DNA from: Octopus sinensis
Taxonomy: Eukaryota
Direction of reading: 5' to 3'
Assembly (NCBI RefSeq): GCF_006345805.1
Contig: NC_043001.1
Location: 41,850,001-41,914,000, forward strand
Length of the DNA stretch: 64,000 bases
Made by a program: the position numbers and the translations under genes. The notes under the pieces were generated by a model. That model ran no database searches. It was not told where the DNA came from and saw nothing but the letters and a program-made list of their open reading frames with translations. Below are positions 424-64,000 of this stretch, in pieces (position 1 is the stretch's first letter; the number at the start of each line of letters is the position of its first letter).

Positions 424-811
424 TAATAATAATGAGAAGAATAAGAAGCTACTAGATAAAAAAAAATAAAAATAAACTTTGGAATACTTATAACTGGACA
501 TAAGAGAATTCTATGGATGTGCTAAATAGACATTCCTAATTCATCATCATCATTTAACATCCATTGTCCATGCTGGCATGGGTTCAACAGTTTGACCAAG
601 GCTGGTAAGCTAAGGGGCAACACCAGATTCCAGTCTAATTTGGTATGGTTTCTATGACTGGATGCCCTTCATAATGCCATCCACTACGAATTTATTCATA
701 GAACAATAAATTCAAGCAGAGAAACAACTTTAATTTGCTGGAATATAATATATATTAATTTTAAACATCAAATGAATTTTTTAAAGGAAGAAATTATTAT
801 AAAAAACCTAC

Positions 812-1178
812 CAGGAATATTGTATTCTTCCCAGTCCAATGAACAAGCCTCAACTGCTGGTTTAAACCCACAGAAATTTTCAATATCAGTCTTCTTCAGG
901 CTAACTGGTATGCCAAAGCTTGAACCACGAATTTTTTTGACTTTGTCAATTGTGGATATATGCCAATCTCGGAATTTAGTGCATAGATCGTCTCGTTGGA
1001 TAGGTGACAGTTTTGGATTTAGAGCAGCCAGTCGCCATAGTGTGACAATTTCATCACAGAAACTGGCTGCTGCATGTTGGGAAGCATTTGCACTACTGTT
1101 GCTGTTGCAGCGATTCACATGGTTACTGTTACCACTGTGAGAACTGGACATTTTGGTTGCAAACCACCAAACTAAAAT
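812..1178 (-). CDS. ZSWIM8: ZSWIM8 coding exon 9 (gene continues beyond window start)
   Basis: ILVWWFATKMSSSHSG...HAAASFCDEIVTLWRLAALNPKLSP...FCGFKPAVEACSLDWEEYNIP; ttctag/GTAGGT; 367 nt, phase 0 to 1; no stop codon. Confidence 0.93.
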
Positions 1179-3847: not shown

Positions 3848-4070
3848 TTTGCATTTTTGAACCAGATGGTTTCAGGTAGGTTGATATTAAAAAGGCTAAG
3901 GTAAAATGAATAAAATGACACTTTCATCCACTTTTAATCTTTAATTTTCAAAACAGTAGAAAAAAATGTACATGAGACTAAATCATATGAGTAATCAAGA
4001 GGATTTGGCATCACAGACACAAAACAAATAAATAAAAAAAGTAAAAAATAAAAACCTTTCCTTAACTTAC

Positions 4071-21000: not shown

Positions 21001-21608
21001 TAGTCAATCTGGCTGGTGTGTCTGCCAGAACGGTAGGTGACTAGGTGAGAGGAGAGTTTCCTGAAGTTGGTATTGCAGACCATAAGGTCATTTGCATCGC
21101 AGAACTCCAGCAGCCTGGTTCCCTCCTCATTACGAGAGCCGAAACCATAGCCTCCATGGACGCCATGGAAGCCCCCGACATGCCGTCCGACATGTCCATT
21201 GAAATCACCTGCCACGAAGAGAAGGTCACTGTCATTTGTCAACGAGGTAGTTTGCAATAGGGTGTCATAGAATTGGTCTTTTTGTCCTTCCGGTAGCCCT
21301 GGCTGAGGGGCATATGCCGAGATGATGGTAACTGTCCTGTGGTGAAGAACTAATCTAATTTTAATTACTCTGTCACTTACTCTGACTACCTCAATTACCT
21401 TACCTACCCATTTCTCTGCAAGAAGTATACCCACACCCCCGACCCCGTCAGTGTTCCCTGCCCAGAAAATCTTATACCTGTGTTCCTTGCCTGTGAGGAG
21501 CCTAGCGGAACCTCCTCTCCACCTTACTTCCTGGATACAACATACATCCACACGTCTCCGTTCAAGCAGCTCTACAATCTCTCCAGACCTACCTTTCAAT
21601 GTGCCAAC
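18043..21608 (-). mobile_element. RTE LINE copy 2 with 967-aa APE+RT ORF, lacking the terminal ~100 nt and tail
   Basis: ORF 18696-21599 with QEVRW, GDFN and QHRLVV endonuclease motifs plus RT; a single frameshift at ~18720 near the C-terminus. Confidence 0.95.
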
Positions 21609-27200: not shown

Positions 27201-27830
27201 CTTTTGGAAATATGCTGTGCTCGAGAAGACCAGGCAAGCCAAATGAGACCATAACCCGTGGCCTATGCCAGGAGCATAACCAGCCCGCTTATGCATACCT
27301 TTTCCTTCTTTGGTCACTAAACTCTGCTTGCGAAGACCTGTTGAGGCAAGTAAAATCAAAATCAATTCGATGACTGGCATCTATGCTAGCGGGGTGCAAA
27401 GAGCACCATGCGAGTGGGATCGGTGACAGAGCGGCTATTCAAGTATGATCACTACCAGTGTCGCCTTACTGGCACTTATGCCTGTGCTAGTAGGGTGCCA
27501 AGAGCAGCCAACTGGCTTTCATACCCGTGGCACGTAAAAGGGCACCATTCGAGCGTGATCGTTATCAACATCGCTTCACTGGCACGTGTAAAAAGATTCG
27601 AGCAAAGTCATTGCCAGTGCTGCCTGACTGGCCCCCATGCCGGTGGCACGTAAAAAGCACCCACTACACTCTTCGAGTGGTTGGCGTTAGGAAGGGCATC
27701 CAGCTGGAGAAACTCTGCCAGATCAAGATTGGAACCTGGTGCAGCCATCTGGTTTGCCAGCCCTCAGTCAAAATCATCAAACCCATGCCAGCATGGAAAG
27801 CGGACTTTAAACGATGATGATGATGATGAT
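24240..27830 (+). mobile_element. RTE LINE copy 3, near full-length, disrupted, (GAT)n tail, different 3'UTR subfamily
   Basis: APE and RT ORF pieces 24234-27056 with stops and an internal deletion near 24455; tail ends at 27830. Confidence 0.92.
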
Positions 27831-27864
27831 TTATACATGTATGTATATATATATATAGAGATAT

Positions 27865-27996
27865 ATCATCATCATCATCATTTAACGTCCGCTTTCCATG
27901 CTAGCATGGGTTGGACGGTTCAACTGGGGTCTGGGGAGCCCGAAAGCTGCACCAGTCCAGTCAGATCTGGCAGTGTTTCTACAGCTGGATGCCCTT

Positions 27997-28000
<4 letters not shown>
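27865..28000 (-). mobile_element. RTE 3'-end fragment, tail-to-tail with copy 3, running into a (TA)n array
   Basis: Nearly identical to 1824-1960. Confidence 0.88.
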
Positions 28001-28925
<925 letters not shown>

Positions 28926-29429
28926 ATTCAAAGAGCAATAAAGATTCAAGTTAATTTAAATGAATTTACTTGAATATGGTACCTAACTTAGATGCACCAA
29001 AAAAACTATACTGATTTAACAATACAGTAATGTGGGGTGATTATAAGCGAGAAAGAAGCAACAGAATGGATAGGTTTTTAGTACGATCGTTTCATACAAG
29101 GACAGGTTTTTTATTAAAAGTTGCAAAGATTACAGCATATAAACGAGTCCCGTACTCATCAGCTAAAATACATGTGAGTTCTCTAGACATCCTAGTGTTT
29201 GAGGCTATACTCATGAAGTAATGTAGATAAATAAGTAACATAAACAGATTTCTAAAGTTCATTAAAGTTCTTTAAAGATGATGTACAGTCTTATCACAGA
29301 ATTTAAAAAAATTTTTTAGCATCACAGAGAAGGTGACCTAATCCATATGCATTTCCATAGATATGATGAGGGATTATATACTCACAGAAGACAAATTTAT
29401 CTTCTGTGAGTATATAATCCCTCATCATA

Positions 29430-31621
<2,192 letters not shown>

Positions 31622-31622
<1 letters not shown>

Positions 31623-32640
31623 CTCTTTTACTCTTAACTCTTTTACTTGTTTTTCAGCCATCCGGCTGAGGCCATGCTGGGCACCGCCCTTTTGCTACCC
31701 TCTCTAAGTCCAGTTTGCCGGGCTGGCCACTGATCTAAGAGAGAGTTTGTAGCTGCTGGCCTTAGGTTACCTTCGTACCTTGCAGTGGGTTCATCTGGGA
31801 TCCCGAAAGCAGCTTGTCTAGATGTTTTTGAAAATGTCCACATCCGCATCATGTAGATCTCTTAGTTTTCTTGGCAGTTTGTTGAACAGCTGAGGGCCCC
31901 TGAACCCAGGCTATTACAGTATCTGCTCCTTACCCTGGATGTGGAAGATGGGACCTTTGGCACCACACAGTGACGTCCTGTACGGGGATTGGAACAGCTC
32001 TCAATTCCAAAATTTGGTGCTAGTCCCCCAGGATTTTCCATATGTATATCACTGCATATCTCTCTCGTCTTCGTTCCAGGAGTACAAATTGAGTTCCCTA
32101 AGCCTCTCCCATAGTTCTTTTTTTTCATGGTGGAAATCCTCTTGTGAAATGTCTTTGGATTGTCTCAAGCTCTGTGGTTAGTTTGACACTATGCGGTGAC
32201 CACAGTTGGGAGCAGTAGTCCAGGCGGCTTAGGACAAATGTCCTCCATAGTGTCAACATGGTCTCGCAGTCTCTTGTCCGGAATGTCCTCAGGATCCAGC
32301 CAGTGAGTCGTCTGCACATTGCCGCCACCTTCGCGATGTGTGAAGAAAAAGATGCATCGTCACTCATGTCTATCCCCAGGTCCCGTATTGATTTCGATAC
32401 TGGGATTTCGATCCCTCCTGGACCAGTATAGTTGTGTTGTAATGTATGTGTTTACAGCTTGATATGTAAGGCTTGAAATTTACCAGCATTAAATTGCATG
32501 TTGTTGTCTTCAGCCCATTTGTATATGGCATCCAGATCTTGTTGTAAAGGTCAGCATCAGCTGGTTTTTGATTGCCTGTGCTACCTTTGTGTCATCAGCA
32601 TAGCTAGTGAGGGATGTTGTTTGTGCTACCAAGGGCATGT
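31622..32640 (-). mobile_element. CR1-clade LINE 3' fragment with GAGTAAAA-type tail (tail similar to local SINEs)
   Basis: GWILRTFRTRD...FVLSRLDYCSQLWSP...IQRHFT; internal deletion/frameshift near 32125. Confidence 0.85.
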
Positions 32641-32664
32641 CAGAGAGCGCCACCAAAAACATAT

Positions 32665-32936
32665 ATATAATATGTATGTATATATAAATATTTTATATTT
32701 ATATATTTATACATACATATACACACACATATATATATATTTATATATATATATTTAAATATATGTATTCATATATATATATTTACATATATATATTTAT
32801 ATATATATATATTTATATATATATACCCACATATATATATCTATATAGGATGCCAACATACATACACACACACATATATATATATATATGACGATGATGA
32901 TATATACACACATATACATATACATGCATATGTGTA

Positions 32937-32996
<60 letters not shown>

Positions 32997-33046
32997 ATAT
33001 GTATATATATATATGTAATATATATATTATATATATATATATATAT

Positions 33047-33125
<79 letters not shown>

Positions 33126-33231
33126 ATATATATAATATATATATGTATATATATGTATGTATAATATGTATGTATATATTATATATATATATGTTATATA
33201 TATATATTAATATATATATATATATTAATAT

Positions 33232-33285
<54 letters not shown>

Positions 33286-33364: not shown

Positions 33365-35781
33365 TGTTGGCATCCTTTTTGTCTCAGGAGACAATGGAGT
33401 TGCGCATAAAGTAGTCTAGTCCGGCTTTTACATTTCATGTCCTGATACATTTCCTGCTGTGTAGTCCAATCCTGGACAAACACTCCCTCTGGCAGGTACC
33501 GCAAATGTAGCAAAGACTGTTCCTGGCGTGCCTCAAGGTTCAGTGCTTGGGCCCTTGTTGTTCTTAGTCTTCATAAATGACTTGCCCGACGACCTCACGC
33601 AACACACCCTTCTATTTGCCGACGATATCAAACTGGTTGCTCCTCGCGGTAATATAGAGGATCTTCGTTGATGCCTCCACCAAATTTGGAAGTGGTCTAA
33701 CAATTGGGACCTGTGTCTGAACGTGTCAAAGTGCTGTCATCTGCCTGTCGGCTCTACTCCTGCAACTCAACTTGATTTCGAGCCGGGTCGTCTGCTGCTG
33801 GAGAGGACCGATCAGGTAAAGGACCTAGGTATCTTGGTGGATTCCTCCTTTTCGCCTTCGGCCCAGTGCGTCCATGCTGCCAACAATGCACGCGGAATTC
33901 TGTTCTTGATTCGACGGTCATTCGGAATGCTCACAGCAGCCATATTCCTACCACTCTATGTCACGCTGGTGAGACCCATATTGGAGTATGGGATTGAAGC
34001 CTCTTCTCCTTATCTCCTCAAAGACATACAGCATCTCGAAAGAGTCCAGAAGCTGGCTACCCGCATGGTTCATGGTCTCAAAAATTTGTCCTACGAAGAA
34101 AGGCTGAGGACGCTCGACCTTTATTCTCTTGAAAAACGCCGCCGCCGTGGTGATCTCATTCTTGCCCACAACATCATAAGCGGAAAGTGTAACCTCTCGA
34201 AAGAGCTGTTCTTCACTCCTGCTCCAGAGCGTCGGCTGCGGAGTCATTCCGAAAAGCTCTACCTGCGACAATTTCATCTCAATCGAAGGAGAGGAGCTTT
34301 CTCCGTCCGGGTTGCGGATCCGTGGAACAAGCTGCCAGACGAGATGGTGAAGATGCCGACGACCGCTTTGTTCAAAGCCTCCCTTGACCTCAAGTGGCCT
34401 GAACTCTTTACATGAACACCACCCTGTACTTAACTCCATGTCCCCCTACATGGCCTTGCTATTTGCTTTTGAGCCAAATTAACTAACTAACTAACTAACT
34501 AATGCCATAGTTTCTTGTTGATGTCTTTTCTTGTCTTTCCATTTCTCCTCTCTCTCTCTGTCACTCCTTTGTATTCCCTCTCTTACGGTACGTCGCCAGT
34601 CTCCACGGTTGCCGGCAACTGCCTCCCAACCGCTAATATTGATGTTGCAGGCCTTCATGTCCCTTTTGCAAACATCCTTGTAACGTAAGAGCAATCTACC
34701 TACAGACCTAGTACTCCTAGCAAGCTCTCTGTAGAGTATGTCCTTGGGGATTCTGCCATCTTTCATACGGCTAACATGCCCAAGCCATCTCATACGTCTT
34801 TGTGTGAGGAGTGCAAACATGCTTGGTATTCCTGCTTGCCTGAGGACATCTTTGTTGGGGATATGGTTCTGCCATTTGATGCGGAGAATTTTCCGGAGGC
34901 AGTGCAGGTGAAAGATGTTTAGGCGACGCTCTTGGCGTGTGTATAGCGTCCAAGTCTCACTTCCATATAGTAGAGTGCTAAGTACACATGCCTGGTAGAT
35001 CTTCATTTTCGTGATCTTGGTCAGCTTATTGTTGTCCCAAGCCCGTTTGGAGAGTTGGGCCATTGCAGCAGCTGCCTTGCCAATGCGTATATTGAGCTCA
35101 GCGTCGAGGGATAGATTGTAGGTGATGGTAGAGCCCAGATAGGTAAACTTCTCCACCTCTTGTAATCTGTGGTCTCCAATATGTATGTTTGGGATGTCCG
35201 ATGTAGCCTGACCCATGATGTTGGTCTTCTTAAGGCTGATAGCTAAGCCAAAGTCGTTACATGCTTGCTCAAAACAGTTAATGAGCCTTTGGAGGGCTTC
35301 TTCTGTGTGTGATACCAGAGCGGCATCATCAGCAAATAGCATCTCCTTGATCAGGATGTTTCTGATTTTGGTCTTGGCATGCAGACGCGAGAGATTGAAC
35401 AGTTTCCCATCACTTCTACTGTGCAGAAACACTCCATCATCTGATGTCTGAAAGGCATGTGAGAGTAAGAGCGAGAAGAAGATGCCAAACAATGTAGGAG
35501 CGAGGACACAACCTTGCTTTACCCCGTTTTTTATTTGGAAGGCGGCTGATGTTGAACCGTTGTGCTGTATGGTGCCTTGCATGTCATCATGGAAAGACTT
35601 GATGATCCTCAGCAGCTTTGGTGGACATCCGATTTTTTGGAGCAGGGTGAAGAGGCCTGTTCTGCTTACCGAGTCAAAGGCCTTTGTTAGATCAATGAAG
35701 GCCATATATAATGGCATTCTCTGCTCTCTGGACTTCTCCTGAAGTTGGCGTATGGAGAATATCATATCGATAGTTGATCGT
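33365..35781 (-). mobile_element. RTE-clade (BovB-like) LINE, 5'-truncated, split by the CR1 insertion
   Basis: 424-aa RT ORF (AFIDLTKAFDSV, GVKQGCVLAP, LFADD); the C-terminal zinc finger [17 protein letters not shown] lies on the other side of the insert (33440-33520). Confidence 0.9.
33524..34500 (+). mobile_element. 3' fragment of the same (TAAC)n-tailed CR1-clade LINE, nested in an RTE element
   Basis: ~97% identical by eye to 57655-58629; same 3'UTR and tail. Confidence 0.92.
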
Positions 35782-51743: not shown

Positions 51744-52628
51744 ACTTTGGTGGACCCGAGAGTAGAGGGTGTTGTAGTTTATAGACGTCAAGTTACGAAT
51801 GTAGAGGATGACTTTCTCGGATATTCCCCCCCTGGAGAATGCTTACCAGGTAGCCAGCCTCTCTTATAGGAGGCTGTGAGTGAATGATGACTGTGTTAAT
51901 GTATATCACAGGTCGATATTATTTAGATTAAAAATAGTATCTATAAATAGAGTGAGATAGAAAAAGATAAAACTGGTTATAGAGAAAAACAGATGTCAAA
52001 TTAAGATAATAGAGGGTTTTAGCTAAGTTTCTTAAAGTCGGTGCCCGTAGTTTGAACCATTAATCTTGTTTAACAAAAAATTGGTTTTGATATGGGTCAC
52101 ACAGTAGGCCTATGAAGTTGCAATACTTAAATATGTGGTTAGCAAAACATACATTACAGAGAGGAAGAGAGAGAGAGAGAGACAGACAGAGAGAGAGAGA
52201 GAGAGAGAAAGAGGGAGCGCACTACACGAATATACAAAGGAACACTGACTTCTTGAAATACAAAGCGAAGGTTTACTTCAGCTAAGTTTATCTTCGCTTC
52301 GTCAATCAGCAGACAAATTTTACTAGACAGAAACACTGATAATCAATGGATGTTAAAGGAAGAAATGATATAACACGAATAAACTAGATGATAAGCCATA
52401 ATTTTGTCCCGAAGCAAAGCGTTGCGTGATGGTAAAATGTTTAGCAAATAAAAGGGGAACTAGTATCTTTCTCACTCACAATAACAACACTATTCCAAAT
52501 GCATCGAGTGACTTCGGTAGCAATCGGTAAATTTTTCGGTATATTTCGGGGAAAAAAAAGATAAACGCACTCTAGCTTCTTTTACTCTTACTCCTACTAT
52601 CCCCAACCCACCTTTTTTTTCTCATCAA

Positions 52629-52636
52629 ACCGGAAG
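52629..52636 (+). promoter_or_regulatory. ETS/GABP-like site (ACCGGAAG) in the RPS14/ZSWIM8 divergent promoter
   Basis: Exact CCGGAAG core ~70 nt upstream of the TOP tract; such sites are common in RP-gene and bidirectional promoters. Motif match only. Confidence 0.45.
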
Positions 52637-52700
52637 ATGACAAAATCTCACTTTCTGACGAGATTTACAGGACCTCGTAAGTTCTCGTTCTCATCTACTA

Positions 52701-52733: not shown

Positions 52734-53377
52734 GTATGTGTTTTTTGTTTGCTGTATTTAATCTGCTTTCATCTTATTTTATTTAACACATTTAAATTAT
52801 AAATTATATTTTTAATATACACTGTAACTAATTGCTCACTGAATAAAGTACTTTTGCGTATCTCACTGCTAGAAATTGTTGTTTTTTTGCTCCAAACACA
52901 TGATGGTCTAATTTTAAATTGATTTTATTTCTACACGTTCTTGGTTATTTAGATTTATTTTAACCTTTAGTGTATTATAGTGTTATGTAAATTTTAAGTT
53001 GTGATGGTATTTTTTATCGTGTGATTTGAAATTTAACTTAGTTTTTGAAGATAAGGCATATTTTTAAACAACTTTATGTCCATTTAACTCGCCAGTGTTA
53101 TAGGGTGTCTACTAATGAAATATACCGAGGGAATTGCCCGCCAGATATTAATATTCTATTTTGTGCTAATCAAAACTGATGTTAGATTAAGTCAATCTTT
53201 GTTCCACATGTTTTGTAATTCTGTTGGTGAACTGTATATTCACCAGTATGTGAAACACATCATCGGGAAATTTATTGAGAAACTAATACTCTGATTTGGT
53301 TATCCCTTATTCAATGCAAATGTTTATTATTTCTGTTTCCTAACACCCACCTTATTGTAATGAAATCTGCTTTCAGA

Positions 53378-53526
53378 ATGGCTCCACGTAAAGGAAAGAC
53401 GCAACAGCAGCAAGAGCAAGTATCGCTCGGCCCACAAGTGCTGGAAGGAGAGAATGTTTTCGGCGTAGCCCACATTTTTGCTAGTTTCAATGATACATTT
53501 GTGCATGTTACTGACCTTTCAGGCAA
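53378..53526 (+). CDS. RPS14: 40S ribosomal protein S14 (uS11), first coding exon
   Basis: [49 protein letters not shown](K); tttcag acceptor at 53376; GTAAGT donor; 149 nt of CDS. Later exons not seen in the window. Confidence 0.96.
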
Positions 53527-53586
53527 GTAAGTGATTTCTTTGTATATATATTTTTTACGTCAAGATATTGTTAGTGCTTGTAAATC

Positions 53587-53651
53587 AAGATATGTGATGA
53601 CAACAACCTTGATACCTTGTGTTTTGCGATGTCTTGGAGAGCTGATGTCTT
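53587..53651 (+). ncRNA. SNORD55: C/D-box snoRNA, SNORD55/U55-like, divergent short copy 1
   Basis: Terminal stem AAGATA/TGTCTT; C box GTGATGA (53594-53600); D box CTGA (53642-45); guide TGTCTTGGAGA pairs 28S UCUCCAAGGUG with G-U wobbles; homologous 5' part to copies 2-4. Confidence 0.7.
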
Positions 53652-55377
53652 CTTTTGAATTCCTAAGTTTATAACGAGAAAATACATTTCGGAGGCCTCA
53701 TTTTTGGAATCTTCGTGATTTTAAATCCCAGAATAATACTTACGTATTCAGAAGATGATATTTCGAAACTGAATTTTCAAACCTTCATGGTCCGAATACT
53801 TTTGGTTTTTGTGCGTGTGCACAATTATATCGCGAACCATCCCAAAATTTACAATAAAGCCGTGTCGGCCATCAATCACCACTTCCATAACCTTTTTCCT
53901 TGAAGTCTAACCTGAAATAGCGTATGGCTGATAACATTAACACTGGTGATACAGTGAATTCTTAAAGGAGAGCGAAAAAAAGATCTCGTTGGTAATTCAT
54001 GGCTTCCAACCTGTTGAGAGTAGGGAAGGCCTAAAGAATCACAATACTTGCTGATGTCGTCATGTGTAAAAACGCGGAGAATTTGTAGTGGTACATCCAC
54101 ACTTCATATTAGCAACAGAATTGAAAATGTGATTGTTTAATACATTTTGAATTCAGAAATTTCTCAGGGATTTGATAAACTGGGTAAAGTGATTACTTAT
54201 TTATATATCATGAGTTATATCAAGTCAGTCTGTTGAGTCATGTGCAGTCTATCCATTTGGTTGTGGTCAGGTTTTCTTAACCCTTTCGTTACCGTATTTA
54301 TTTTGAGATGCTCTGTTTCATTCAATTAATTTTAAATAGAACAAAGAATTTAATAAAAGAACTTAGTTATCATTAAGCTAGTGTTAGGAACATAAATTGT
54401 GACAAAGGTTTGGTGAAAGATTTTAATTCAATACTTACGAAAACAAGACATTTGTACTACAGAGGCAGAGGCGGTTTTGGCTGGGTTGGTATCATAATTT
54501 GGGACCAGTGCTCAAAAGCCAAAATAAGCTGGACCGTTTTATGTTGATTTGAACAGTTGTCTCGGTGATATTTTAATGGCTTTTGTGTAAATTCACATCT
54601 AAATGGGTTCTTGATTTTGAGTTAGCTATAATTTTTCACGATTTAATTTGTCATTTGAATAGAAAGAGGATAATTTAACTCTTTTTACTTAGCAGCCGAG
54701 ACTGGTTATATGACACAAACTTTCTGTTTTTTAATGTAATTTAAATTATCTTTCAAAATTTCATGTTTAATAATGTTCCAAACATCAGTTTAATGACTTT
54801 TTTTCTTCATTGAATTAAAGCAAAGAAAGTTTATTTCAACAGAAAAAGTAGTAAAGGGGTTTATAGAAACCTTGAACCTTAATTCGACATTCTTTTGATA
54901 TAACTTGACGAAATTAAAACATTTTACTTCGGGTATTTCCATGGGTTGTGGAGTATAGATATAATGAAATTATGCCATCAATGTCTCATTTTAAACTTGA
55001 AGAATAAAAGCATTGCATATTTGTTCTTACCTATTTCATGTGTGTATGTAAAATCTGCAAATTTCCAAGCAGAAAACAATCGAACTGTTGTTTGCTTCCA
55101 TGGAAATACCCGAAGTGAAATGTTTTGATTTTGTCGAGTTATATCAAAAGAATGCCCTTAATTCTACATTTCCCTGTCGACTTTGCTAGTTGTGTGTATG
55201 CACTGATAATAGTTCTGTAAAAAGTCATCCCAACGAAACGAAATTATGCGAGTGTAAAAGTTGACACTCAAGTCTATATAGGTTGCTTTAATAGTTTACG
55301 AACATTGAGTTTCTATCATTTGGTTGCATAGTATTTTTTAAACTATTTTGTCTAGATATTTATTGAAGGCCATGCAT

Positions 55378-55456
55378 CAGGACATATGATGACAACAACT
55401 TGGTACCTTATGTTTCTCAATGATAGGTCCAATCACCTTGGAGAACTGATGTCCTG
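55378..55456 (+). ncRNA. SNORD55: C/D-box snoRNA, SNORD55/U55-like, copy 2
   Basis: Perfect 7-bp terminal stem CAGGACA/TGTCCTG; C box ATGATGA (55386-92); D box CTGA (55446-49); 12-nt guide TCACCTTGGAGA complementary to conserved 28S UCUCCAAGGUGA. Family assignment is from recalled human U55 (ATGATGACAAC...ACCTTGGAGAGCTGA). Confidence 0.85.
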
Positions 55457-55494
55457 TAATTAGGTGTTAAGAGATTTATGGCCAACAGAAAACT

Positions 55495-55751
55495 GGGCAT
55501 TCTTTCGATATAACTCGACAAAATCAAAGCATTTCACTTTGGGTATTTCCGTGGGTTGTGAAGTATAGATATAATGAAATTATGCCAGCAATGTCTCTCA
55601 TTTTAAAAAAGCCTTGCATATTTGTTCTTACCTGTATTGTGTGTATATAAGATCTGCATTCCAAGCAGAAAACAGAATCGAACTGTTATTTGCTTCCACG
55701 GAAATACCTGAAGTAAAATGTTTTTTGTCACGTTATATCGAAAGAATGCCC
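55495..55751. mobile_element. MITE with ~55-60 bp TIRs (GGGCATTCTTTCGATATAAC...GTTATATCGAAAGAATGCCC); further copies at ~54888-55157, 58904-59160, 59804-60070
   Basis: Long imperfect terminal inverted repeats seen directly; superfamily unresolved. Confidence 0.8.
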
Positions 55752-55755
55752 TTAA

Positions 55756-56047
55756 CCCTTTTACTGTTTAAACCGGCCAAAATATTCTACCTATTTTATG
55801 TTCAAACTAGTCAGATATGGTCATTCATAGCTACCTTATTGTGTCATTTTAAAAATAATCACATCATTGAAATCTCAAAGCCATGAAATGATGCAAGATT
55901 AATTTTACATGGTGTGAATACATAAGCTTTACATTTTACAGAATAATCTGAATGCTAAAGGGTTAAATATGAATAGGTGATTATGGACGGTTGGGGGGCT
56001 GGTCACATGAACCAAAATTTTTTTCAGGCGGTTTGGTAATGAAAGGG
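55756..56047. mobile_element. piggyBac-like non-autonomous element(s), TTAA-flanked
   Basis: TTAA|CCCTTT...AAAGGG|TTAA with an extra internal right end at 55962. The paralogous unit at 55155-55165 shows the empty site (CCC TTAA TTCTAC). A second copy is in unit B. Confidence 0.75.
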
Positions 56048-56148
56048 TTAATTCTACATTTCCTTGTCGACTTTTCTATTCGTGTGTGTGCATTAATAAT
56101 AGTTCCATAAATATAAGTCATCTTATATAATAGTTCCATAAATATAAG

Positions 56149-58629
56149 CTCATCTACTCGAAGCGATAAGATTCGTTTCAGCTTCGCATGACTGCTTGGT
56201 ACTAGGCGACTTCAACGCTCCCACGATCGATTGGCCCGCATCAATTTGTACAACATCTTCCCGGTTCGGCCAGGCCCTTCTTGACGTGGCTGAAGATTGT
56301 TTTCTATTGCAACATGTTGAATATCGGTCTGGGCAGCAGCCATCTATGCTAGATCTGGTATTCTCCCGCTATCCAAGATCAGTGTCAGACGTATCTGTGT
56401 GCGCCCCTCTTGCCAAGAGTGATCATGCGGTCCTGAAGTTCGTCATGCACACAACTTTTTCCACGCCCACGATTACTTCGCTGCCACGTAGAGTCTTCTC
56501 TGCAATTAATCTTGAAATTCTAACCGAGGCTTCTGCGCTTCTGGACTGACGTTGTCCTCAGTTGACGAACTATGGTCATCCCTCAAAGCATATGTAATCT
56601 GTTTGACTGACCAGGCAGTTCCCGTTGGACTTCCCAAGAGGAAGAAACACAAGCCCTGGGTGACGAAGAAGGTTGAACGAGAACGTCGACTCAGAGATAT
56701 TGCTTGGGCTGAATTCAAAAATCTGGATTCGACTGCAGCTTTTGAGGTGTACAAAACTCAACGAGACTGAGCCGTGAAAATTGAAAAGAAAGAACGCTTC
56801 AGTTATGAATACAAAATCGCGGCAAATGCCAGTAGCAATCCAAAAACCTTCTTTGCCCATGTCCAGCGGAATTCCCGCTTGAACAACCAGATTGCAACGT
56901 TGGTAGACTCAACAGGCGTATCGATTGAGGACCCTTATCAACAGAGTCAATTATTTGCCGAGGCTTTTTCAACTATTTTCAAACAAGATGATGGTCGTGA
57001 ACCCCCTCCATTTGATAGATCGGTACCTCCAATGCTTCGATTGATCATCACGCGGGACCAAGTCAAGCGTGTTATTCAAGGCCTCGATGTCAACAAGGGT
57101 CACGGCCCTGACGGCATACACCCACGGGTTATCAAAGCGTTGGCTCCGGTCATCTGCGAGCCCTTAACACGACTATTCAATATGTCGTTGGCGACGGGTG
57201 TTATACCTGCAGACTGGAGAACAGCGATAGTCTGCCCAATTTTCAAGAAAGGGAGCCGCGAAGACCCGCTTAACTACCGACTGGTTTCCCTTACATCAAT
57301 AATCAGCAAGATGTTCGAAACCATCCTTAAGAAAAGTATGATGCTCCACCTCCTGAACACAGCCTCGATCACTGATTCCCAACACGGCTTCGTGCCGAAG
57401 AGATCATGCTTGACCAACTTACTAGTAATGGAAGAATTGGTGACGCGCATCCTCGATGATAGTGATACTGTTGACATCGTTTTATTGGACTTTGCCAAAG
57501 CTTTTGACTCGGTAAACCACCGCCTACTACTTGTCAAGCTTCAAGCATATAGTTTCCATCCGGATATTGTACGATGGGTTGGTGCCTTCCTCTCAGATCG
57601 CTCCTTCCAAGTTCAAGTTAATGGTTCGCGGTCCGATGTCTCCAGTGCGAGCAGTGGCGTGCCTCAAGGTTCAGTGCTTGGGCCTTGTTGTTCTTAGTCT
57701 TCATAAATGACTTGCCCGACGACCTCACGCAACACACCCTTCTATTTGCCGACGATATCAAACTGGTCGCTCCTCGCGGTAGTATAGAGGATCTTCGTCG
57801 ATGCCTCCACCAAATTTGGAAGTGGTCTAACAATTGGGACCTGTGTCTGAACGTGTCAAAGTGCTGTCATCTGCCTGTCGGCTCTACTCCTGCAACTCAA
57901 CTTGATTTCGAGCCGGGTCGTCTGCTGCTGGAGAGGACCGATCAGGTAAAGGACCTGGGTATCTTGGTGGATTCCTCCTTTTCGCCTTCGGCCCAGTGCG
58001 TCCATGCTGCCAACAAAGCGCGCGGAATTCTGTTTTTGATTCGACGGTCATTCGGAATGCTCACAGCAGCCATATTCCTGCCACTCTATGTCACGCTGGT
58101 GAGACCCATATTGGAGTATGGGATTCAAGCCTCTTCTCCTTATCTCCTCAAAGACATACAGCACCTCGAAAGAGTCCAGGGGCTGGCTTAACCGCATGGT
58201 TCATGGTCTCAAAAATTTGTCCTACGAAGAAAGGCTGAGGACGCTCGACCTTTGTTCTCTTGAAAAACGCCGCTGCCGTGGTGATCTCATTCTCGCCCAC
58301 AACATCATAAGCGGGAAGTGTAACCTCTCGAAAGAGCTGTTCTTCACTCCTGCTCCGGAAGTCGGCTGCGGGGTCATTCCGAAAAGCTCTACCTGCGACG
58401 ATTTCATCTCAATCGAAGGAGAGGAGCTTTCTCTGTCCGGGTTGCGGATCCGTGGAACAAGCTGCCAGACGAGATGGTGAAGATGCCGACGACCGCTTTG
58501 TTCAAAGCCTCCCTGGACCTCAAGTGGCCTGAACTCTTTACATGAACACCACCCTGTACTTAACTCCATGTCCCCCTACATGGCCTTGCTATTTGCTTAT
58601 GAGCCAAATTAACTAACTAACTAACTAAC
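56149..58629 (+). mobile_element. CR1-clade LINE, 5'-truncated (partial APE + RT), (TAAC)5 tail
   Basis: GDFNA and SDH endonuclease motifs; [18 protein letters not shown] and LFADD RT motifs; few stops/frameshifts; 9-bp TSD TAAGTCATC (56114-22 / 58630-38). Confidence 0.92.
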
Positions 58630-58786
58630 TAAGTCATCCCAACGAAATGAAATTATGTGAGTGTAAAAGTTGACACTCAAGTCTATGTAGGTTGCTTTAA
58701 TAGTTTGCCAACATTGAGTTTGTATCATTTGGTTGCATAGTGTTTTTTAAACTATTTTGTCTAGATATTTATTGAAGGCCATGCAT

Positions 58787-58865
58787 CAGGACATATGATG
58801 ACAACAACTTGGTACCTTATGTTTCTCAATGATAGGTCCAATCACCTTGGAGAGCTGATGTCCTG
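58787..58865 (+). ncRNA. SNORD55: C/D-box snoRNA, SNORD55/U55-like, copy 3
   Basis: Same stem; C box 58795-58801; guide TCACCTTGGAGA-G; D box 58855-58. Confidence 0.87.
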
Positions 58866-59686
58866 TAATTAGGTGTTAAGAGATTTATGGCCAACAGAAA
58901 ACTGGGCATTCTTTCGATATAACTCGACAAAATCAAAGCATTTCACTTTGGGTATTTCCGTGGGTTGTGAAGTATAGATATAATGAAATTATGCCAGCAA
59001 TGTCTCTCATTTTAAAAAAGCCTTGCATATTTGTTCTTACCTGTATTGTGTGTATATAAGATCTGCATTCCAAGCAGAAAACAGAATCGAACTGTTATTT
59101 GCTTCCACGGAAATACCTGAAGTAAAATGTTTTTTGTCACGTTATATCGAAAGAATGCCCTTAACCCTTTTACTGTTTAAACCGGCCAAAATATTCTACC
59201 TATTTTATGTTCAAACTAGTCAGATATGGTCATTCATAGCTACCTTATTGTGTCATTTTAAAAATAATCACATCATTGAAATCTCAAAGCCATGAAATGA
59301 TGCAAGATTAATTTTACATGGTGTGAATACATAAGCTTTACATTTTACAGAATAATCTGAATGCTAAAGGGTTAAATATGAATAGGTGATTATGGACGGT
59401 TGGGGGGAGGGGGCTTGGTCACATGAACCAAAATTTTTTTCAGGCGGTTTGGTAATGAAAGGGTTAATTCTACATTTCCTTGTTGACTTTTCTATTCGTC
59501 TGTGTGCATTGATAATAGTTCCATAAATATAAGTCATCCCAACGAAATGAAATTATGCGAGTGTAAAAGTTGACACTCAAGTCTATGTAGGTTGCTTTAA
59601 TAGTTTGCGAACATTGAGTTTGTAACATTTGGTTGCATAGTATTTTTTAAACTATTTTGTCTAGATATTTATTGAAGGCCATGCAT

Positions 59687-59765
59687 CAGGACATATGATG
59701 ACAACAACTTGGTACCTTATGTTTCCCAATGATAGGTCCAATCACCTTGGAGAGCTGATGTCCTG
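59687..59765 (+). ncRNA. SNORD55: C/D-box snoRNA, SNORD55/U55-like, copy 4
   Basis: Same stem; C box 59695-59701; guide and D box 59755-58; exactly 900 bp after copy 3; one internal T>C change. Confidence 0.87.
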
Positions 59766-60269
59766 TAATTAGGTGTTAAGAGATTTATGGCCAACAGAAA
59801 ACTGGGCATTCTTTCGATATAACTCGACAAAATCAAAGCATTTCACTTTGGGTATTTCCGTGGGTTGTGGAGTATAGATATAATGAAATTATGCCAGCAA
59901 TGTCTCTCATTTTAAACTTGAAAAAAAGCCTTGCATATTTGTTCTTACCTGTTTCATGTGTGTATGTAAAATCTGCAAATTTCCAAGCAGAAAACAGAAT
60001 CGAACTGTATACCATGGAAATACCTGAAGTGAAATGTTTTGACTTTGCCAGGTTATATCGAAAGAATGCTGAAAACTGAAAGTGAAGAGAATCACCAACA
60101 TGCTTGAGTTGGTCTAAGCACAATTTCCATTTCTTTAGCCCTTTGGCATTAAGCTTACTTTGTCAAATGCAATGCTCTGACATTGTTTTGAATTAATCAG
60201 GCTCAAGAAGAGTATCAATATTTGTTAGTAACTTCAATTTTTTAAAAATAGTCTTGAAATTTGTGCTTG

Positions 60270-61135
60270 GATACCGTTCATGAAGTTTTCATCCTGTCAG
60301 TCAAAAAAGTCATCAACAGTAGACATATCACTGATACTGGTTCCCAGTGTTTTTTCATGTTGGGTAACAGGTGGTAGTCAGATGGGACCAAATCAAAATA
60401 GGAGGAGTGGTCAACCTGTTCAAAGCTGCAGTTATGCACAACAGCCATTGAAACCAAGGATTTGTGTGATGGAGCATTGTCCTGATGATACAAGAACCCT
60501 TTGTTCAATTTTCCTGGGCATTTGGTCTTGATGACCTTCCATTACTGCTGCAACAAGTTGGCATAATACTCTTTTGATGGTGTGGCCCTTTTGAAGATAG
60601 TCAATAGGCACAATGCCTTTTGCATCCCAAAAAACTGAAGCCCAACACCCCTGCAGGTGGAATGACTGGCCTTTTGGGGCAGATGGGAGGGGGTGTTTCC
60701 ACTGCATGGATTGTCTCTGGTTCAAAGTAAAGAGGCCAACACATCCTGGATTCAGGGAAACCTGGATCTGCTTGAAACAGTCTTGAATAATTGTCAAAAG
60801 ACATGGCAACTACCAAGTAGGGTTGTTTATTATCTCAACTCACAAGAAATGCTAATAGATTGGCTGTTTGATTTATTGTCAATTGCCTGTCATCTATCAT
60901 CATGTGGTGGCAGTTGCAGAATGTCCAAACCTTAGGTCATCTTCAAGATTTTCCCTGTCCCCCCTAAATTCACCTGCCTACTTTTGCACTGTTGATAAAG
61001 CTGGAGCATTATCCCCTGATGTAGCAATCATGTTGGCACAAATGTCCTTTTTCTGCAGGTACTTGATAACACCACGGTGTCACATTTTATTCATTTTCAA
61101 GAGAAGTCACTACTAGTTACTTTTGAAGACTTCTT
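60270..61135 (-). mobile_element. Mariner fragment
   Basis: ASVFWDAKGIVPIDYLQKGHTI; GFLYHQDNAPSHKS; DLVPSDYHLLPNMKKH. Confidence 0.82.
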
Positions 61136-61156
61136 TTTACAACTGTTTATCTGGAA

Positions 61157-61335
61157 CAGTGGTTTTCAACCGGGGTTCCGCAAGAAGTTACAAAACTGCT
61201 AAAATCGGCAGTAATTTTAAATTCTCCTGTGCAGATATGTGTGCATAAGACTATTAAATTATTGCACAGGGGTTCCTTGAGCCAGTGGAATGTTTCCTTG
61301 GGGTTCCGCTCCAGCAAAATTGTTGAAAAGCACTG
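61157..61335. mobile_element. hAT (Charlie/Buster-like) MITE
   Basis: TIRs CAGTGGTTTTCAAC / GTTGAAAAGCACTG with perfect 8-bp TSD ATCTGGAA. Confidence 0.9.
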
Positions 61336-64000
61336 ATCTGGAAGGAAACTGCAGTTATTAATAAGACGGTTGAAATTAATGCTTGTAAGATTTTATAGCT
61401 TCATCATCACTCCTTTATAGTCAGCCTATGTACTTTTCGGCCCACCCTCATAAAACTTAACTTACATTCTAATGGGATTGCATTACTGTTGATATTTATG
61501 AATATTACCACTTTCCCATGTTGGATAAACATGCTACTTACAATTTCTGCATCTTTAAAGTTTGCTGTTGGTTTTGAGTTAAGCACAGACTGACACTTCA
61601 AGATGTTTTGTAAGGAATTAGTTTTATGCTTAAGTTTCCATTCTTACATGGGTTGAGCAAGTTTCATTGCTTGCATCATCTTGCATATAGCACAAAACCT
61701 GCTGGCTTTGTTTTATGTTTTGCGCTGGGTATATTTTCTTGTAATAACACTACCCTGTATTACTGTTTAATTGAGGTTGCTGTCTTTGGGTGACCTGTTG
61801 TGACTTGCAGGCTCCACATATATCTGTGCGCATGCAGATAACTGTGCCACAGTGGCTTGGTACATTGTTATCCTTCGTGCAACATATATACTTTTGTAAC
61901 AAAGTGGTAAGAATAATCAGCAGCTTAATTGTAGCTTTGTCAGTTGCAAAATGAATTAATGCGCTTTCTATGGGTATTTGAGAAAACACAACACGTGTTT
62001 TTGTATTTTCCACCTTTAAAAACATTGCAACACCTGCACTAAATACACTGAAGCTATTTTTTGCACCTACAAGTTGTCTGAAACCTGTTCTCTACATGGT
62101 TTGCCAATATTGGAAAATCAAAGTTTTTAGCTTGTGCAATACTATCCCAAATTATCCACTCTAGACACAAATTTAGGAAGTACCAAACTGGCGCTAGTTA
62201 ACATTTGGAACCATTGCATCACTACCTCTCTTCTCCATACCATTTGCTTAAGTTTACATATACCATAAAAAGCCATGTAATTTAACACAAAAATAAAATT
62301 TAGGAGTACGTAAATTACATGAACAAATTTTTTGGGGCCTTTTTTTCTTTTTTTTTTCATAAAGATTTACAAAACAAACATTTGTACCAAAAGTTGACTC
62401 ATTTAATGTCAGAGTAGGTTTTTACAGAAAAAATAAGGGCTTAAATATAATGAAGCTGACTTTATTTATGTTGGGTGGTATAATGCTTCCTTTTTCTCTA
62501 TAAATTTACTAAAACCATTACATTGCTGGTAATCACATTCCTCAGTCAAACAGTCCAACCCATGCCAGCATGGAAAGTGGAGGTTAAATGATGTTGATGA
62601 TTTCCTATGATAGTGATTTGAGAAGGCATACAACAGTATGCTAAAGATCAGACTTAGTCTCTTGACAAGAAATGTAAAATAAAGTTTAATAATATCTAAT
62701 CATAAGTGAAATTATGCTAAATACAAATAAATTGAAAACCTTTTCTCCCTGGCCGGCAATTCTGAAAACTTTTGGGTGTGAATTTTACATATCCTAAAAA
62801 TCACCTGCATAAATTACACAGGTATGCAAATTACATGAGTTTTTACAGTAAAACCTTTGGTGATTGCCCTCGAATTTGGCTGCTTTTTGCCTTTGTATTT
62901 GTATGTACACACAAAACATGATGCATTCACTTATTAATCATATAAAATCCAACCAATGTCACTGCTGAATATACCATGTTTCTGGGTTTGGTCTTACTGT
63001 ATAACAACCTTGGGCAAGTGTCATTAGCTATAGTCTTGGGTTGACCAAACACCTATGGTTAGATTTAAGAGATAGAAACTGAAAGAAGCTCATTGTGCAT
63101 GTGTTTCATTGTCTTGACATTACCTGATGGTTGTAAATGTCATCATCATAAAAATGGTGTGCTTTGTTTCCAACTACCTGTGAAAATATGTCCCACCATA
63201 AGGAAAACCTATGCTTGCAAACAGGTGTGGTTTGATGACAGGATATGCATCCAGCCATAGAAAATCTGCTTCATTGAATTGTTTGACCTATGCAAGCATG
63301 GAATAGTGGTTATAGATATAATGATGTGGCAATTATTTACCTATATTTTTGCATGATTCTTCTTTTTTAAATTTTGCCTTTTTTATTTTGTATGTTCTAG
63401 GTTCTTCATATTCATAATGTTTTTGCTTTGTGATGTTCTGTCTTTCATATGGCCTTGCGTAAGCTATTATGTTAATTACTGAGTTTTATTATATTTGGTA
63501 GGAAATTTGTACAACCTCTTCAGATATCTTTGGTTTTCATAGCTTTTTATCTTTTTTTTATTGGTTGTTGTTTGTCTTCCTCTGACATTTGTCTTTCCTT
63601 ATCTGTTTTAAAACTGAAGTAACTTGATGTTTAAAAAATCAAAGCTCACCAAATAGGTTTTTTTTCTTTTCTTTCCCTGTATGGAAAAAAGACTTAAGAA
63701 CTTATCCCTTTCCCCTCACTTTGAGAATAAGTGAAAGTGAAGATCAATGTTAAAAATTGAAACAAAAAATTAACCCTATCTCAGAACTTGTTTTGGTAAG
63801 TTGTGTGAAAGGACTGAGTGTAATATTGAAGTGAATTTACTCTAGATGTAATTGTGGATGTGTGTGTATATACATACGATGAAATATATATGTGTGTGTA
63901 TATATATATATATATATTTATATATAATGATTAAGTATTTGACTATGGCCATATTGGCATCACCTTGAAGGGTGGAATCGACCCCAGAACTTTTTTTGAA

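What the first reader, a model, noticed from the sequence alone, without database searches (positions are those of the whole stretch)
53587..59765. Four SNORD55/U55-type C/D snoRNAs packed into a single RPS14 intron
Seen: four C-box...guide-D-box units with terminal stems (53587, 55378, 58787, 59687), all sense to RPS14 and downstream of its exon-2 donor. I found no further RPS14 coding exon between them. The guide TCACCTTGGAGA is the reverse complement of conserved 28S GG-UCUCCAAGGUGA, and the D+5 rule points to the C in UCU(Cm)CAAGG. Knowledge (recalled): this is the site of human SNORD55/U55 (28S Cm2804, old Cm2791), hosted in RPS8. Vertebrate intronic snoRNAs are normally one per intron because they are released by debranching and exonucleolytic trimming. 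Inference: this is a host switch to another 5'TOP gene plus an intron-internal polycistronic snoRNA array, which needs endonucleolytic separation, cryptic/recursive splicing, or else yields only some mature copies.
Basis: partly seen in the sequence, partly recalled or inferred. Interest (0 to 1): 0.82.

Follow-up and report, generated by a model that had tools for sequence, protein, structure and literature searches.

The report
Duplicated U55-type snoRNAs in RPS14 intron
A long, transposon-filled intron of the ribosomal protein S14 gene carries three near-identical copies and one decayed copy of a small guide RNA predicted to direct methylation of one conserved cytosine in large-subunit rRNA; this is a recent local duplication of a known kind of gene, not a new kind of system.

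Summary
Three 81-nt box C/D snoRNA genes (55377-55457, 58786-58866, 59686-59766, + strand) have a C box, a D box and a 7-8 bp terminal stem. Their 12-nt guide is perfectly complementary to UCUCCAAGGUGA of eukaryotic LSU rRNA. It is placed so that the site methylated by SNORD55 in human (28S Cm2791) is selected. Rfam matches them only below threshold (snoZ101, 36-39 bits against 44).

The fourth unit (53585-53653) is a diverged, shorter paralogue. Its guide keeps only 8 Watson-Crick pairs plus 3 G:U pairs.

All four lie in RPS14 intron 2, which is at least 10.5 kb and has no coding exon before the window ends.

Units 2-4 are not an evolved polycistron. They sit in a recent 0.9-kb tandem segmental duplication that also copies a 261-nt hairpin element. 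One unit is interrupted by a broken LINE.

RPS14 loci from seven other invertebrate samples lack the snoRNA.

Several snoRNAs in one intron are already known in rice, Drosophila, chicken and human (sno-lncRNAs). Expression and processing could not be tested here.

Verdict: a new member of a known kind, of modest interest.

The parts
52611..52676 (+). Putative non-coding exon 1 of RPS14. It begins with a pyrimidine tract (CCTTTTTTTTCTC) and is followed by the donor GTAAGT at 52677. The transcription start is unknown.
   Evidence: Read from the sequence. Inferred, not tested.
53377..53526 (+). RPS14 exon 2: acceptor AG at 53375-53376, ATG at 53378, residues 1-50. The Lys50 codon is split by the donor.
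   Evidence: tblastn with human RPS14, 80% identity, E 5e-24. The exon boundary (…DLSGK|) is the same in 11 related loci.
53527..64000 (+). RPS14 intron 2, at least 10,474 nt and running off the window. It is filled with transposon remains.
   Evidence: No further RPS14 coding exon by tblastn. LINE RT and mariner transposase remnants. In the relatives this intron is 0.13-1.4 kb.
53585..53653 (+). Unit 1: a short (about 65 nt) diverged C/D paralogue, 58 nt downstream of the donor. It has C box GUGAUGA, D box CUGA and stem AAGAUA/UGUCUU, with one compensatory G-C to A-U change and one G:U. Its guide is reduced to 8 Watson-Crick plus 3 G:U pairs, and it has no C'/D' region.
55377..55457 (+). Unit 2: an 81-nt U55/Z101-type box C/D snoRNA gene with guide UCACCUUGGAGA-A-CUGA.
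   Evidence: Rfam snoZ101 39.1 bits, E 1e-4. Fold with an 8-bp terminal stem. 12-bp match to LSU rRNA.
58786..58866 (+). Unit 3: the same snoRNA, 1 nt different from unit 2 (A to G directly 5' of the D box).
   Evidence: Rfam 37.7 bits.
59686..59766 (+). Unit 4: the same snoRNA, 1 nt different from unit 3 (U to C in the internal loop).
   Evidence: Rfam 36.3 bits.
55158..60069 (+). Tandem segmental duplication of period about 900 bp, in 2.6 copies. Copy A is 55158-56047. Copy B is 56048-56122 plus 58631-59463, interrupted by the LINE. Copy C is 59464-60069 and is truncated after the hairpin.
   Evidence: Self-BLAST: A/B 97.9% over 908 bp, B/C 93.0%, A/C 91.3%. Alignment.
55334..55560 (+). Tract (copy A coordinates) that is invariant in all three tandem copies except for two SNPs, both inside the snoRNA (55417, 55445). 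It covers 43 nt upstream and 103 nt downstream of the snoRNA.
   Evidence: In the flanks 18% of columns vary. In 20,000 permutations of the variable columns, none gave a tract of this width with 2 or fewer variable columns.
54888..55161 (.). Hairpin (MITE-like) element, copy 0, directly upstream of tandem copy A.
   Evidence: 83-88% identical to the other copies; terminal inverted repeats of about 60 bp.
55495..55755 (.). Hairpin element, copy 1. It starts 37 nt 3' of unit 2.
   Evidence: RNA fold -98.2 kcal/mol, z = -9.9. Weak Rfam MIR821 hairpin hit.
58904..59164 (.). Hairpin element, copy 2, 37 nt 3' of unit 3. It is 100% identical to copy 1.
   Evidence: Rfam MIR821 37.5 bits, far below the gathering score of 249.
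59804..60069 (.). Hairpin element, copy 3, 37 nt 3' of unit 4. The tandem array ends here.
   Evidence: 87.9% identical to copy 1.
56123..58630 (+). 5'-truncated non-LTR retrotransposon (LINE) inserted in tandem copy B. The RT reading frame is broken, and the element ends in (TAAC)n.
   Evidence: Pfam RVT_1 in two out-of-frame ORFs. A 97% identical copy of its 3' kb lies at 33524-34500.

Best explanation
What it is:
- Units 2-4 are three copies of one box C/D snoRNA gene. It belongs to the group that guides 2'-O-methylation of the C in LSU rRNA UCU[C]CAAGGUGA. That site is human 28S Cm2791 (SNORD55) and Arabidopsis 25S C1850 (U55/snoR15, with rice Z101 the closest Rfam model).
- Unit 1 is an older paralogue that has lost most of its guide and its internal C'/D' part. 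It is probably a weak or inactive relic.

How it would work:
- The RNA is transcribed as part of RPS14 intron 2.
- The C and D boxes, brought together by the 7-8 bp terminal stem, are expected to recruit the core C/D proteins (Snu13/15.5K, Nop56, Nop58, fibrillarin).
- The 12 nt upstream of box D pair with pre-rRNA. The nucleotide opposite the fifth position upstream of box D is methylated.

How three copies arose:
- A 0.9-kb segment (snoRNA plus a 261-nt hairpin element) was duplicated in tandem, probably by unequal crossing-over.
- The core of the copies was later homogenised by gene conversion, and a LINE inserted into the middle copy.

Processing:
- All copies share one intron. Exonucleolytic trimming of the debranched intron alone can free only the outer ends.
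- The internal copies therefore either need endonucleolytic cuts in the 0.8-3.3 kb spacers, or the locus yields snoRNA-ended long RNAs, or only some copies mature.

Shown: the sequence anatomy, the complementarity to rRNA, the duplication structure, and the absence of the snoRNA from related RPS14 loci.

Inferred: expression, snoRNP assembly, the methylation itself, and the processing route.
For: - C box, D box, terminal stem and length are as expected for a C/D snoRNA.
- The best Rfam matches are snoZ101 over its full length (E 1e-4 to 5e-4) and Afu_294. Both consensus sequences carry the identical UCACCUUGGAGAACUGA.
- The target 25-mer was found in at least 120 contigs. Two of them were confirmed as eukaryotic LSU rRNA, at about position 1841 of the LSU, close to Arabidopsis C1850 (PMC6461891).
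- There is a 12-bp perfect duplex in all 120 rDNA loci, and no competing target adjacent to the D box.
- SNORD55 guides 28S Cm2791 (PMC8677024).
- Tandem duplication, mosaic identity and a homogenised 227-nt core.
- LINE and hairpin identities.
- No coding exon between the copies.
- No further copies in the window when my own covariance model was run with filters off.
Against: - All Rfam scores are below the gathering threshold, and the whole-window gathering run returns nothing.
- The paralogues give no sign of selection specific to the snoRNA. The only two differences in the 227-nt homogenised tract lie inside the snoRNA, while 146 flanking nt are identical. Conservation among copies therefore says nothing about function.
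- C' and D' boxes are poor (UGAUAG and CUUA at best).
- The snoRNAs lie more than 4 kb from any possible 3' splice site. This is far from the roughly 70-80 nt optimum described for vertebrate intronic C/D snoRNAs (recalled).
- There are no expression data, no rRNA from this species, and no orthologue in any related locus available.
Confidence: 0.7

Rival explanations
1. The copies are mostly or entirely silent. A single snoRNA gene was passively amplified by transposon-driven unequal recombination in a bloated intron. The copies are neutral passengers or pseudogenes, and the working gene for this site may lie elsewhere in the genome.
For: - Unit 1 has clearly decayed: 13 nt are missing, the guide has 3 G:U pairs, and Rfam gives 18.6 bits.
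- Among units 2-4 the flanks are as conserved as the snoRNA, or more so.
- The surrounding intron is made of LINE, mariner and hairpin elements.
- Reviews state that a quarter to two-thirds of annotated snoRNA copies are not expressed (PMC11028025).
Against: - Boxes, stem and guide are intact in all three copies despite 7-9% divergence of the outer flanks.
- The host is a highly expressed ribosomal protein gene, and the snoRNAs are in the sense orientation.
Confidence: 0.25
2. The shared intron yields snoRNA-ended long non-coding RNAs (sno-lncRNAs), as when two snoRNAs share an intron in human. Exonucleases stop at the outer snoRNPs and the spacer survives.
For: - The structural prerequisite is met: at least two complete C/D units in one intron.
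- The mechanism is documented in PMC11028025.
Against: - The spacers are 0.8-3.3 kb of transposon sequence and include a long hairpin that is a likely nuclease target.
- No RNA data are available.
Confidence: 0.2
3. The one-snoRNA-per-intron arrangement is kept after all. Unannotated non-coding or alternative exons, or recursive splice sites, lie between the units.
For: None found here. It cannot be excluded without transcript data. SNORD116-type repeat hosts work this way (recalled).
Against: - No RPS14-coding segment lies between the units.
- The sequence directly downstream of each unit is a hairpin transposon, not a polypyrimidine tract plus AG acceptor.
- The duplication is very young (98-91% identity).
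Confidence: 0.07
4. It is an assembly artefact. Haplotypes or a collapsed or expanded repeat were mis-joined, so the true copy number differs from three.
For: Tandem repeats at 91-98% identity are hard to assemble. Copies A and B share a 100% identical hairpin element.
Against: - The copies differ by SNPs, indels and a 2.5-kb LINE insertion inside copy B. The LINE is flanked by repeat sequence on both sides. This does not fit a simple haplotype duplication.
Confidence: 0.08

Closest known systems
Human SNORD55 (U55), the guide for 28S Cm2791 (Cm2804 in the newer numbering)
   Same: Box C/D class. The D-box guide pairs with the same LSU rRNA sequence and selects the same C by the box D+5 rule. 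It is intron-encoded in a ribosomal protein gene.
   Different: The host is RPS14 here, whereas it is RPS8 in human (recalled, not checked). There are three copies plus a relic in one intron, against a single copy per intron. No direct score against the Rfam SNORD55 model was seen: clan filtering hid three lower-scoring matches from another family of clan CL00057, and their identity is not known.
Rfam snoZ101 (RF00358, plants) / Arabidopsis U55-snoR15 (25S C1850)
   Same: This is the best Rfam match over the full model length. It has the identical 17-nt UCACCUUGGAGAaCUGA and a terminal stem.
   Different: The score is 36-39 bits, below the gathering score of 44. The plant RNA also has a long D' guide (AAUGGGUAAUUUGCGU-CUGA), which is missing here. 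The RNA here is 81 nt against 96 model positions.
Rfam Afu_294 (RF01506, Aspergillus fumigatus)
   Same: The same D-box guide, UUUCACCUUGGAGAACUGA.
   Different: Only 22-25 bits against a gathering score of 43. The rest of the RNA is unrelated.
Intronic snoRNA gene clusters of rice and Drosophila; identical duplicates within one chicken intron
   Same: Several snoRNA genes lie in one intron of a host gene on the sense strand (PMC2780460, PMC3089462, PMC2770669).
   Different: Rice clusters are compact and hold different snoRNAs. Drosophila clusters are said to be mainly H/ACA. Here there are copies of one C/D snoRNA spaced 0.9-3.4 kb apart by transposon sequence, and processing is untested.
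Human sno-lncRNAs (for example SLERT and LNC-SNO49AB)
   Same: Two snoRNAs in one intron, which is the structural prerequisite (PMC11028025).
   Different: No evidence here that a snoRNA-bounded RNA accumulates.

Membership tests
Box C/D snoRNA | C box RUGAUGA near the 5' end and D box CUGA near the 3' end | tested here: met
   AUGAUGA and CUGA in units 2-4; GUGAUGA and CUGA in unit 1.
Box C/D snoRNA | Short terminal stem that brings the C and D boxes together | tested here: met
   A 7-8 bp stem in the minimum-energy and centroid folds of units 2-4. In unit 1 the 6-bp stem is kept through one compensatory G-C to A-U change and one G:U pair. However, unit 1's minimum-energy fold prefers a competing structure.
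Box C/D snoRNA | Antisense element of at least 10 nt ending 1-2 nt upstream of box D or D', complementary to rRNA or snRNA | tested here: met
   Units 2-4 form 12 Watson-Crick pairs with LSU rRNA in 120 of 120 rDNA loci. Unit 1 has only 8 Watson-Crick plus 3 G:U pairs, so it is not clearly met for unit 1.
Box C/D snoRNA | Stable 60-100-nt RNA bound by fibrillarin, Nop56, Nop58 and Snu13 | not testable with these tools
   No expression or binding data.
SNORD55 / U55 / snoZ101 group (guide for the site of human 28S Cm2791) | The guide selects the C of UCU[C]CAAGG by the D+5 rule | tested here: met
   The fifth nucleotide upstream of CUGA is the G that pairs with that C (sequence). The site assignment to SNORD55 and U55 comes from PMC8677024 and PMC6461891. 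The exact nucleotide within the human sequence rests on recalled coordinates.
SNORD55 / U55 / snoZ101 group (guide for the site of human 28S Cm2791) | Reaches the Rfam gathering score of a family in the group | tested here: not met
   snoZ101 gives 39.1, 37.7 and 36.3 bits against 44; Afu_294 gives 25 or less against 43. There were no hits at gathering thresholds.
SNORD55 / U55 / snoZ101 group (guide for the site of human 28S Cm2791) | The target C is 2'-O-methylated in this species and depends on this RNA | not testable with these tools
   Needs RiboMeth-seq and a knock-down.
Intronic snoRNA gene cluster | Two or more snoRNA genes within one intron, on the host's sense strand | tested here: met
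   Four units lie between the donor at 53527 and the window end with no RPS14 coding exon. Non-coding exons cannot be excluded.
Intronic snoRNA gene cluster | All members are released as mature snoRNAs from the one intron | not testable with these tools
   No RNA data.
sno-lncRNA locus | A stable RNA bounded by two snoRNAs from one intron | not testable with these tools
   Only the genomic prerequisite is met.

The most novel reading that the evidence does not exclude
The 261-nt hairpin that sits exactly 37 nt downstream of each duplicated snoRNA (stem about 60 bp, -98 kcal/mol) may act as an entry site for an RNase III-type enzyme. The enzyme would cut the intron between copies, so that every copy can be trimmed to a mature snoRNA. 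This would be an animal counterpart, built from a transposon, of Rnt1-dependent processing of polycistronic snoRNAs in yeast. Alternatively, the locus may make snoRNA-ended long RNAs in a mollusc. Either outcome would make transposon-mediated amplification a route to raising snoRNA dosage within one intron.
Probability: 0.1. Interest if true: 0.55.

Novelty: new member of a known kind. Interest (0 to 1): 0.3.

Why it matters
- It adds a probable orthologue of the SNORD55/U55 guide in an invertebrate lineage where snoRNAs are hardly annotated. Rfam's thresholds miss it.
- It shows a snoRNA family expanding inside one host intron through transposon-associated tandem duplication and gene conversion.
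- If the internal copies turn out to be expressed, the locus would be a natural test case for how animal cells resolve several snoRNAs from one intron: by endonuclease, as sno-lncRNAs, or by loss.
- As it stands, it does not challenge any established rule. Clusters within single introns and changes of host gene are both documented.

Tried and rejected
1. Yeast snR76/Cm2197 as the equivalent site. I first recalled this and then rejected it. The target lies at about LSU position 1841 in a 3.3-kb LSU, matching Arabidopsis C1850, not 2197. snR76 is confirmed only as the guide of Cm2197.
2. A second (D') guide. The best complementarity of the region after the C box is 9 nt (AAGUUGUUG of SSU rRNA, 39 of 120 loci), with no D' box next to it. 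Unit 1 differs there by an indel. Rejected.
3. An alternative target for unit 1. Nothing beats the same LSU site with 3 G:U pairs.
4. Orthologues.
   - The window's own exon peptide is not in the protein collection.
   - Eleven RPS14 loci from seven other samples have the same exon boundary but a short intron. They have no guide match, no Rfam snoRNA, and no hit with my own model.
   - A metagenome scan for the snoRNA's 5' half found nothing.
5. Selection test among the tandem copies. It was uninformative because the whole 227-nt core is homogenised.
6. More copies in the window. There are none. No other snoRNA was found in the rest of intron 2 or in intron 1.
7. The primary papers on rice and Drosophila intronic clusters are not held. 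They are cited through secondary sources.
Full report
**Observation.** The region was read directly. Three units at 55377-55457, 58786-58866 and 59686-59766 (+ strand) share one layout:
- a C box AUGAUGA, then 59 nt, then a D box CUGA;
- inverted flanks CAGGACA(U)/(A)UGUCCUG, which form the terminal stem in both the minimum-energy and centroid folds;
- the 12-mer TCACCTTGGAGA one nucleotide upstream of the D box.

The 12-mer occurs exactly three times in the 64-kb window, against 0.32 expected with up to one mismatch. The three are copies of each other, so they count as one event.

A fourth unit at 53585-53653 shares the C-box half (85% over 40 nt) and the 17 nt CTTGGAGAGCTGATGTC. It lacks 13 nt in the middle. 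A search for the C-box half and a covariance model built from the four units, run with filters off, found no further copy in the window.

**Host gene.** tblastn with human RPS14 finds residues 1-50 at 53378-53527 (80% identity, E 5e-24) and no other exon anywhere in the window.
- The exon has an acceptor AG at 53375-53376. Its donor GTAAGT starts at 53527 and splits the Lys codon.
- The same exon boundary is seen in all related loci.
- A likely non-coding first exon with a pyrimidine tract ends at 52676 (inferred).
- Intron 2 is therefore at least 10,474 nt. All four units lie in it, in the sense orientation, with unit 1 only 58 nt from the donor.
- A ZSWIM8 exon at 768-1151 (-) gives the same head-to-head ZSWIM8/RPS14 arrangement as relative L001. 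This argues that the window holds the true RPS14 locus and not a stray gene fragment.

**Identity of the RNA.**
- At Rfam gathering thresholds the window has no hit.
- In a permissive search of 53500-60000, units 2-4 match snoZ101 (RF00358, clan CL00057) over the full model at 39.1, 37.7 and 36.3 bits. E is 1e-4 to 5e-4 and the gathering score is 44. Afu_294 matches at 22-25 bits.
- Both consensus sequences contain the same UCACCUUGGAGAACUGA.
- Unit 1 reaches only 18.6 bits (E 6.5).

**Target.** I tested the target with tools rather than from memory.
- The 25-mer GGTCTCCAAGGTGAACAGCCTCTGG is present in at least 120 metagenome contigs.
- Two of these were checked and carry complete eukaryotic SSU-5.8S-LSU units, with the match at about LSU position 1841.
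- Across the 120 rDNA loci, the D guide of units 2-4 forms 12 consecutive Watson-Crick pairs with UCUCCAAGGUGA in every locus. Nothing else comes close.
- The fifth nucleotide upstream of box D is the G that pairs with the fourth nucleotide, UCU[C]. Under the established D+5 rule, that C is the one methylated.
- The literature assigns human 28S Cm2791 to SNORD55 (PMC8677024). It equates it with Arabidopsis LSU C1850, guided by U55/snoR15 (PMC6461891). This agrees with position 1841 found here.
- That Cm2791 is exactly this C in the human sequence rests on my recollection of the neighbouring modified positions.
- I had first equated the site with yeast snR76/Cm2197 and withdrew that. The coordinates do not fit.

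**Unit 1.**
- Its guide region reads TGTCTTGGAGA. Compared with units 2-4 it differs by C to T, A to G and C to T. These changes leave 8 Watson-Crick pairs followed by three G:U pairs at the same rRNA site.
- The same letters can equally be read as the result of a 12-13-nt deletion that fused the C' region to the last 8 nt of the guide.
- The terminal stem is kept, with one compensatory G-C to A-U change and one G:U. The minimum-energy fold, however, prefers a competing structure.
- I read it as an older paralogue that is weakened or dead. Its flanks share nothing with those of units 2-4.

**Origin of units 2-4.** Self-comparison shows a tandem duplication of period about 900 bp.
- Copy A is 55158-56047.
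- Copy B is 56048-56122 plus 58631-59463.
- Copy C is 59464-60069 and is truncated.
- Identities are 97.9% (A/B), 93.0% (B/C) and 91.3% (A/C).
- Copy B is split by a 2508-bp 5'-truncated LINE. Its reverse-transcriptase frame is broken, and a 97% identical copy of its 3' kilobase lies at 33524-34500.
- Each copy carries a 261-nt hairpin element starting 37 nt after the snoRNA (terminal inverted repeats of about 60 bp, -98 kcal/mol, z = -9.9). A fourth hairpin lies just upstream of copy A. All four hairpin copies in the window are in this intron.
- Divergence is mosaic. Upstream, A differs from B and C. Downstream, C differs from A and B.
- A central 227-nt tract (55334-55560 in copy A) is identical in all three copies except for two SNPs, both inside the snoRNA. 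In the flanks, 18% of columns vary.
- This pattern points to unequal crossing-over plus gene conversion. It gives no evidence for selection on the snoRNA itself, and it does not argue against function either.

**Relatives.**
- The window's exon peptide is absent from the protein collection.
- Eleven loci from seven other samples were examined. They come from unidentified invertebrates, and one shares the ZSWIM8 synteny. All have the same exon 2, but their introns are 0.13-1.4 kb.
- They have no guide match, no Rfam snoRNA and no hit with my model.
- A metagenome scan for the snoRNA's 5' half found nothing.
- The RPS14 association is therefore restricted to this lineage. Whether it arose by transfer from another host gene cannot be told.

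**Mechanism.**
- Most likely, the snoRNAs are transcribed within the RPS14 pre-mRNA, assemble C/D snoRNPs, and guide methylation of the site equivalent to human 28S Cm2791.
- With several snoRNPs on one intron, exonucleases acting on the debranched intron stop at the outermost particles.
- Three outcomes are possible: internal copies are freed by endonucleolytic cuts in the long spacers; snoRNA-ended long RNAs form, as documented in human (PMC11028025); or only some copies mature.
- The hairpin placed next to each copy is a conceivable RNase III entry site. This is speculation.

**Comparison with what is known, and verdict.**
- Intronic snoRNA clusters are a recognised category (PMC11028025). 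[quoted passage not shown]
- Chicken has two introns that each hold two identical copies (PMC2770669).
- Movement of snoRNAs between host genes is commonplace (PMC2817437 abstract).
- The finding is thus a real but ordinary case: a new, sub-threshold member of the U55/Z101 guide group, amplified recently by transposon-associated tandem duplication inside one intron, plus a decayed paralogue.
The count of four equivalent copies and the novelty of the arrangement were overstated.

Noticed in passing
window 768-1151 (-): An exon encoding the TPR region of ZSWIM8 (Pfam PF25572, E 3e-29). ZSWIM8 lies head-to-head with RPS14 here, about 52 kb away. The same arrangement occurs in relative L001, where the gap is about 3 kb. 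The locus is therefore syntenic but expanded roughly 15-fold by repeats.
   Followed up: partly
window 18696-21599 (-): An apparently intact 967-aa LINE ORF with endonuclease, reverse-transcriptase and PHD-like zinc-finger domains. Degraded copies of the same family lie at 2415-3854 (-) and 24456-27056 (+).
   Followed up: partly
window 27700-33250: Several kilobases of (TA)/(TATG)-type microsatellite. They show up as long YIYIYI 'ORFs' on both strands.
   Followed up: no
window 33524-34500 and 57655-58630: Two 97% identical copies of the 3' kilobase of a LINE, both on the + strand. The family was recently active.
   Followed up: partly
window 60432-60809 (-): A remnant of a mariner/Tc1-type transposase (Pfam Transposase_1, E 2e-8), just downstream of the tandem array in the same intron.
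   Followed up: no
window 55334-55560, 58743-58969, 59643-59869: A 227-nt core that is identical in all three tandem copies except for two SNPs inside the snoRNA, while the flanks are 7-18% diverged. It looks like a gene-conversion tract covering the snoRNA and the first arm of the hairpin.
   Followed up: yes
window 53560-53568 and 53585-53593: TCAAGATAT occurs twice, 25 nt apart. The second copy forms the 5' strand of unit 1's terminal stem. In addition, GATGTCTT occurs twice inside unit 1, once in the guide and once at the D box and stem. This may be a small local duplication and could explain unit 1's altered guide.
   Followed up: no
window 55357-55363 (and the same position in copies B and C): An AT-rich TATTTAT lies 15-21 nt upstream of the snoRNA 5' end, inside the invariant tract. 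It might hint at independent transcription, but it is closer than a normal TATA box and the region is AT-rich.
   Followed up: no
window 52160-52215: A (GA)n microsatellite about 400 bp upstream of the putative RPS14 first exon. A weak SNORD38-like Rfam hit at 52273-52333 (-) (23 bits, E 0.16) lacks a proper C box and is probably chance.
   Followed up: partly
L001-L006, L127-L131: In the seven related samples, RPS14 intron 2 is 0.13-1.4 kb, and no RPS14 intron examined holds an Rfam-detectable snoRNA. L127 and L128 are two near-identical RPS14 loci on different contigs of one assembly, either haplotypes or a duplication.
   Followed up: partly
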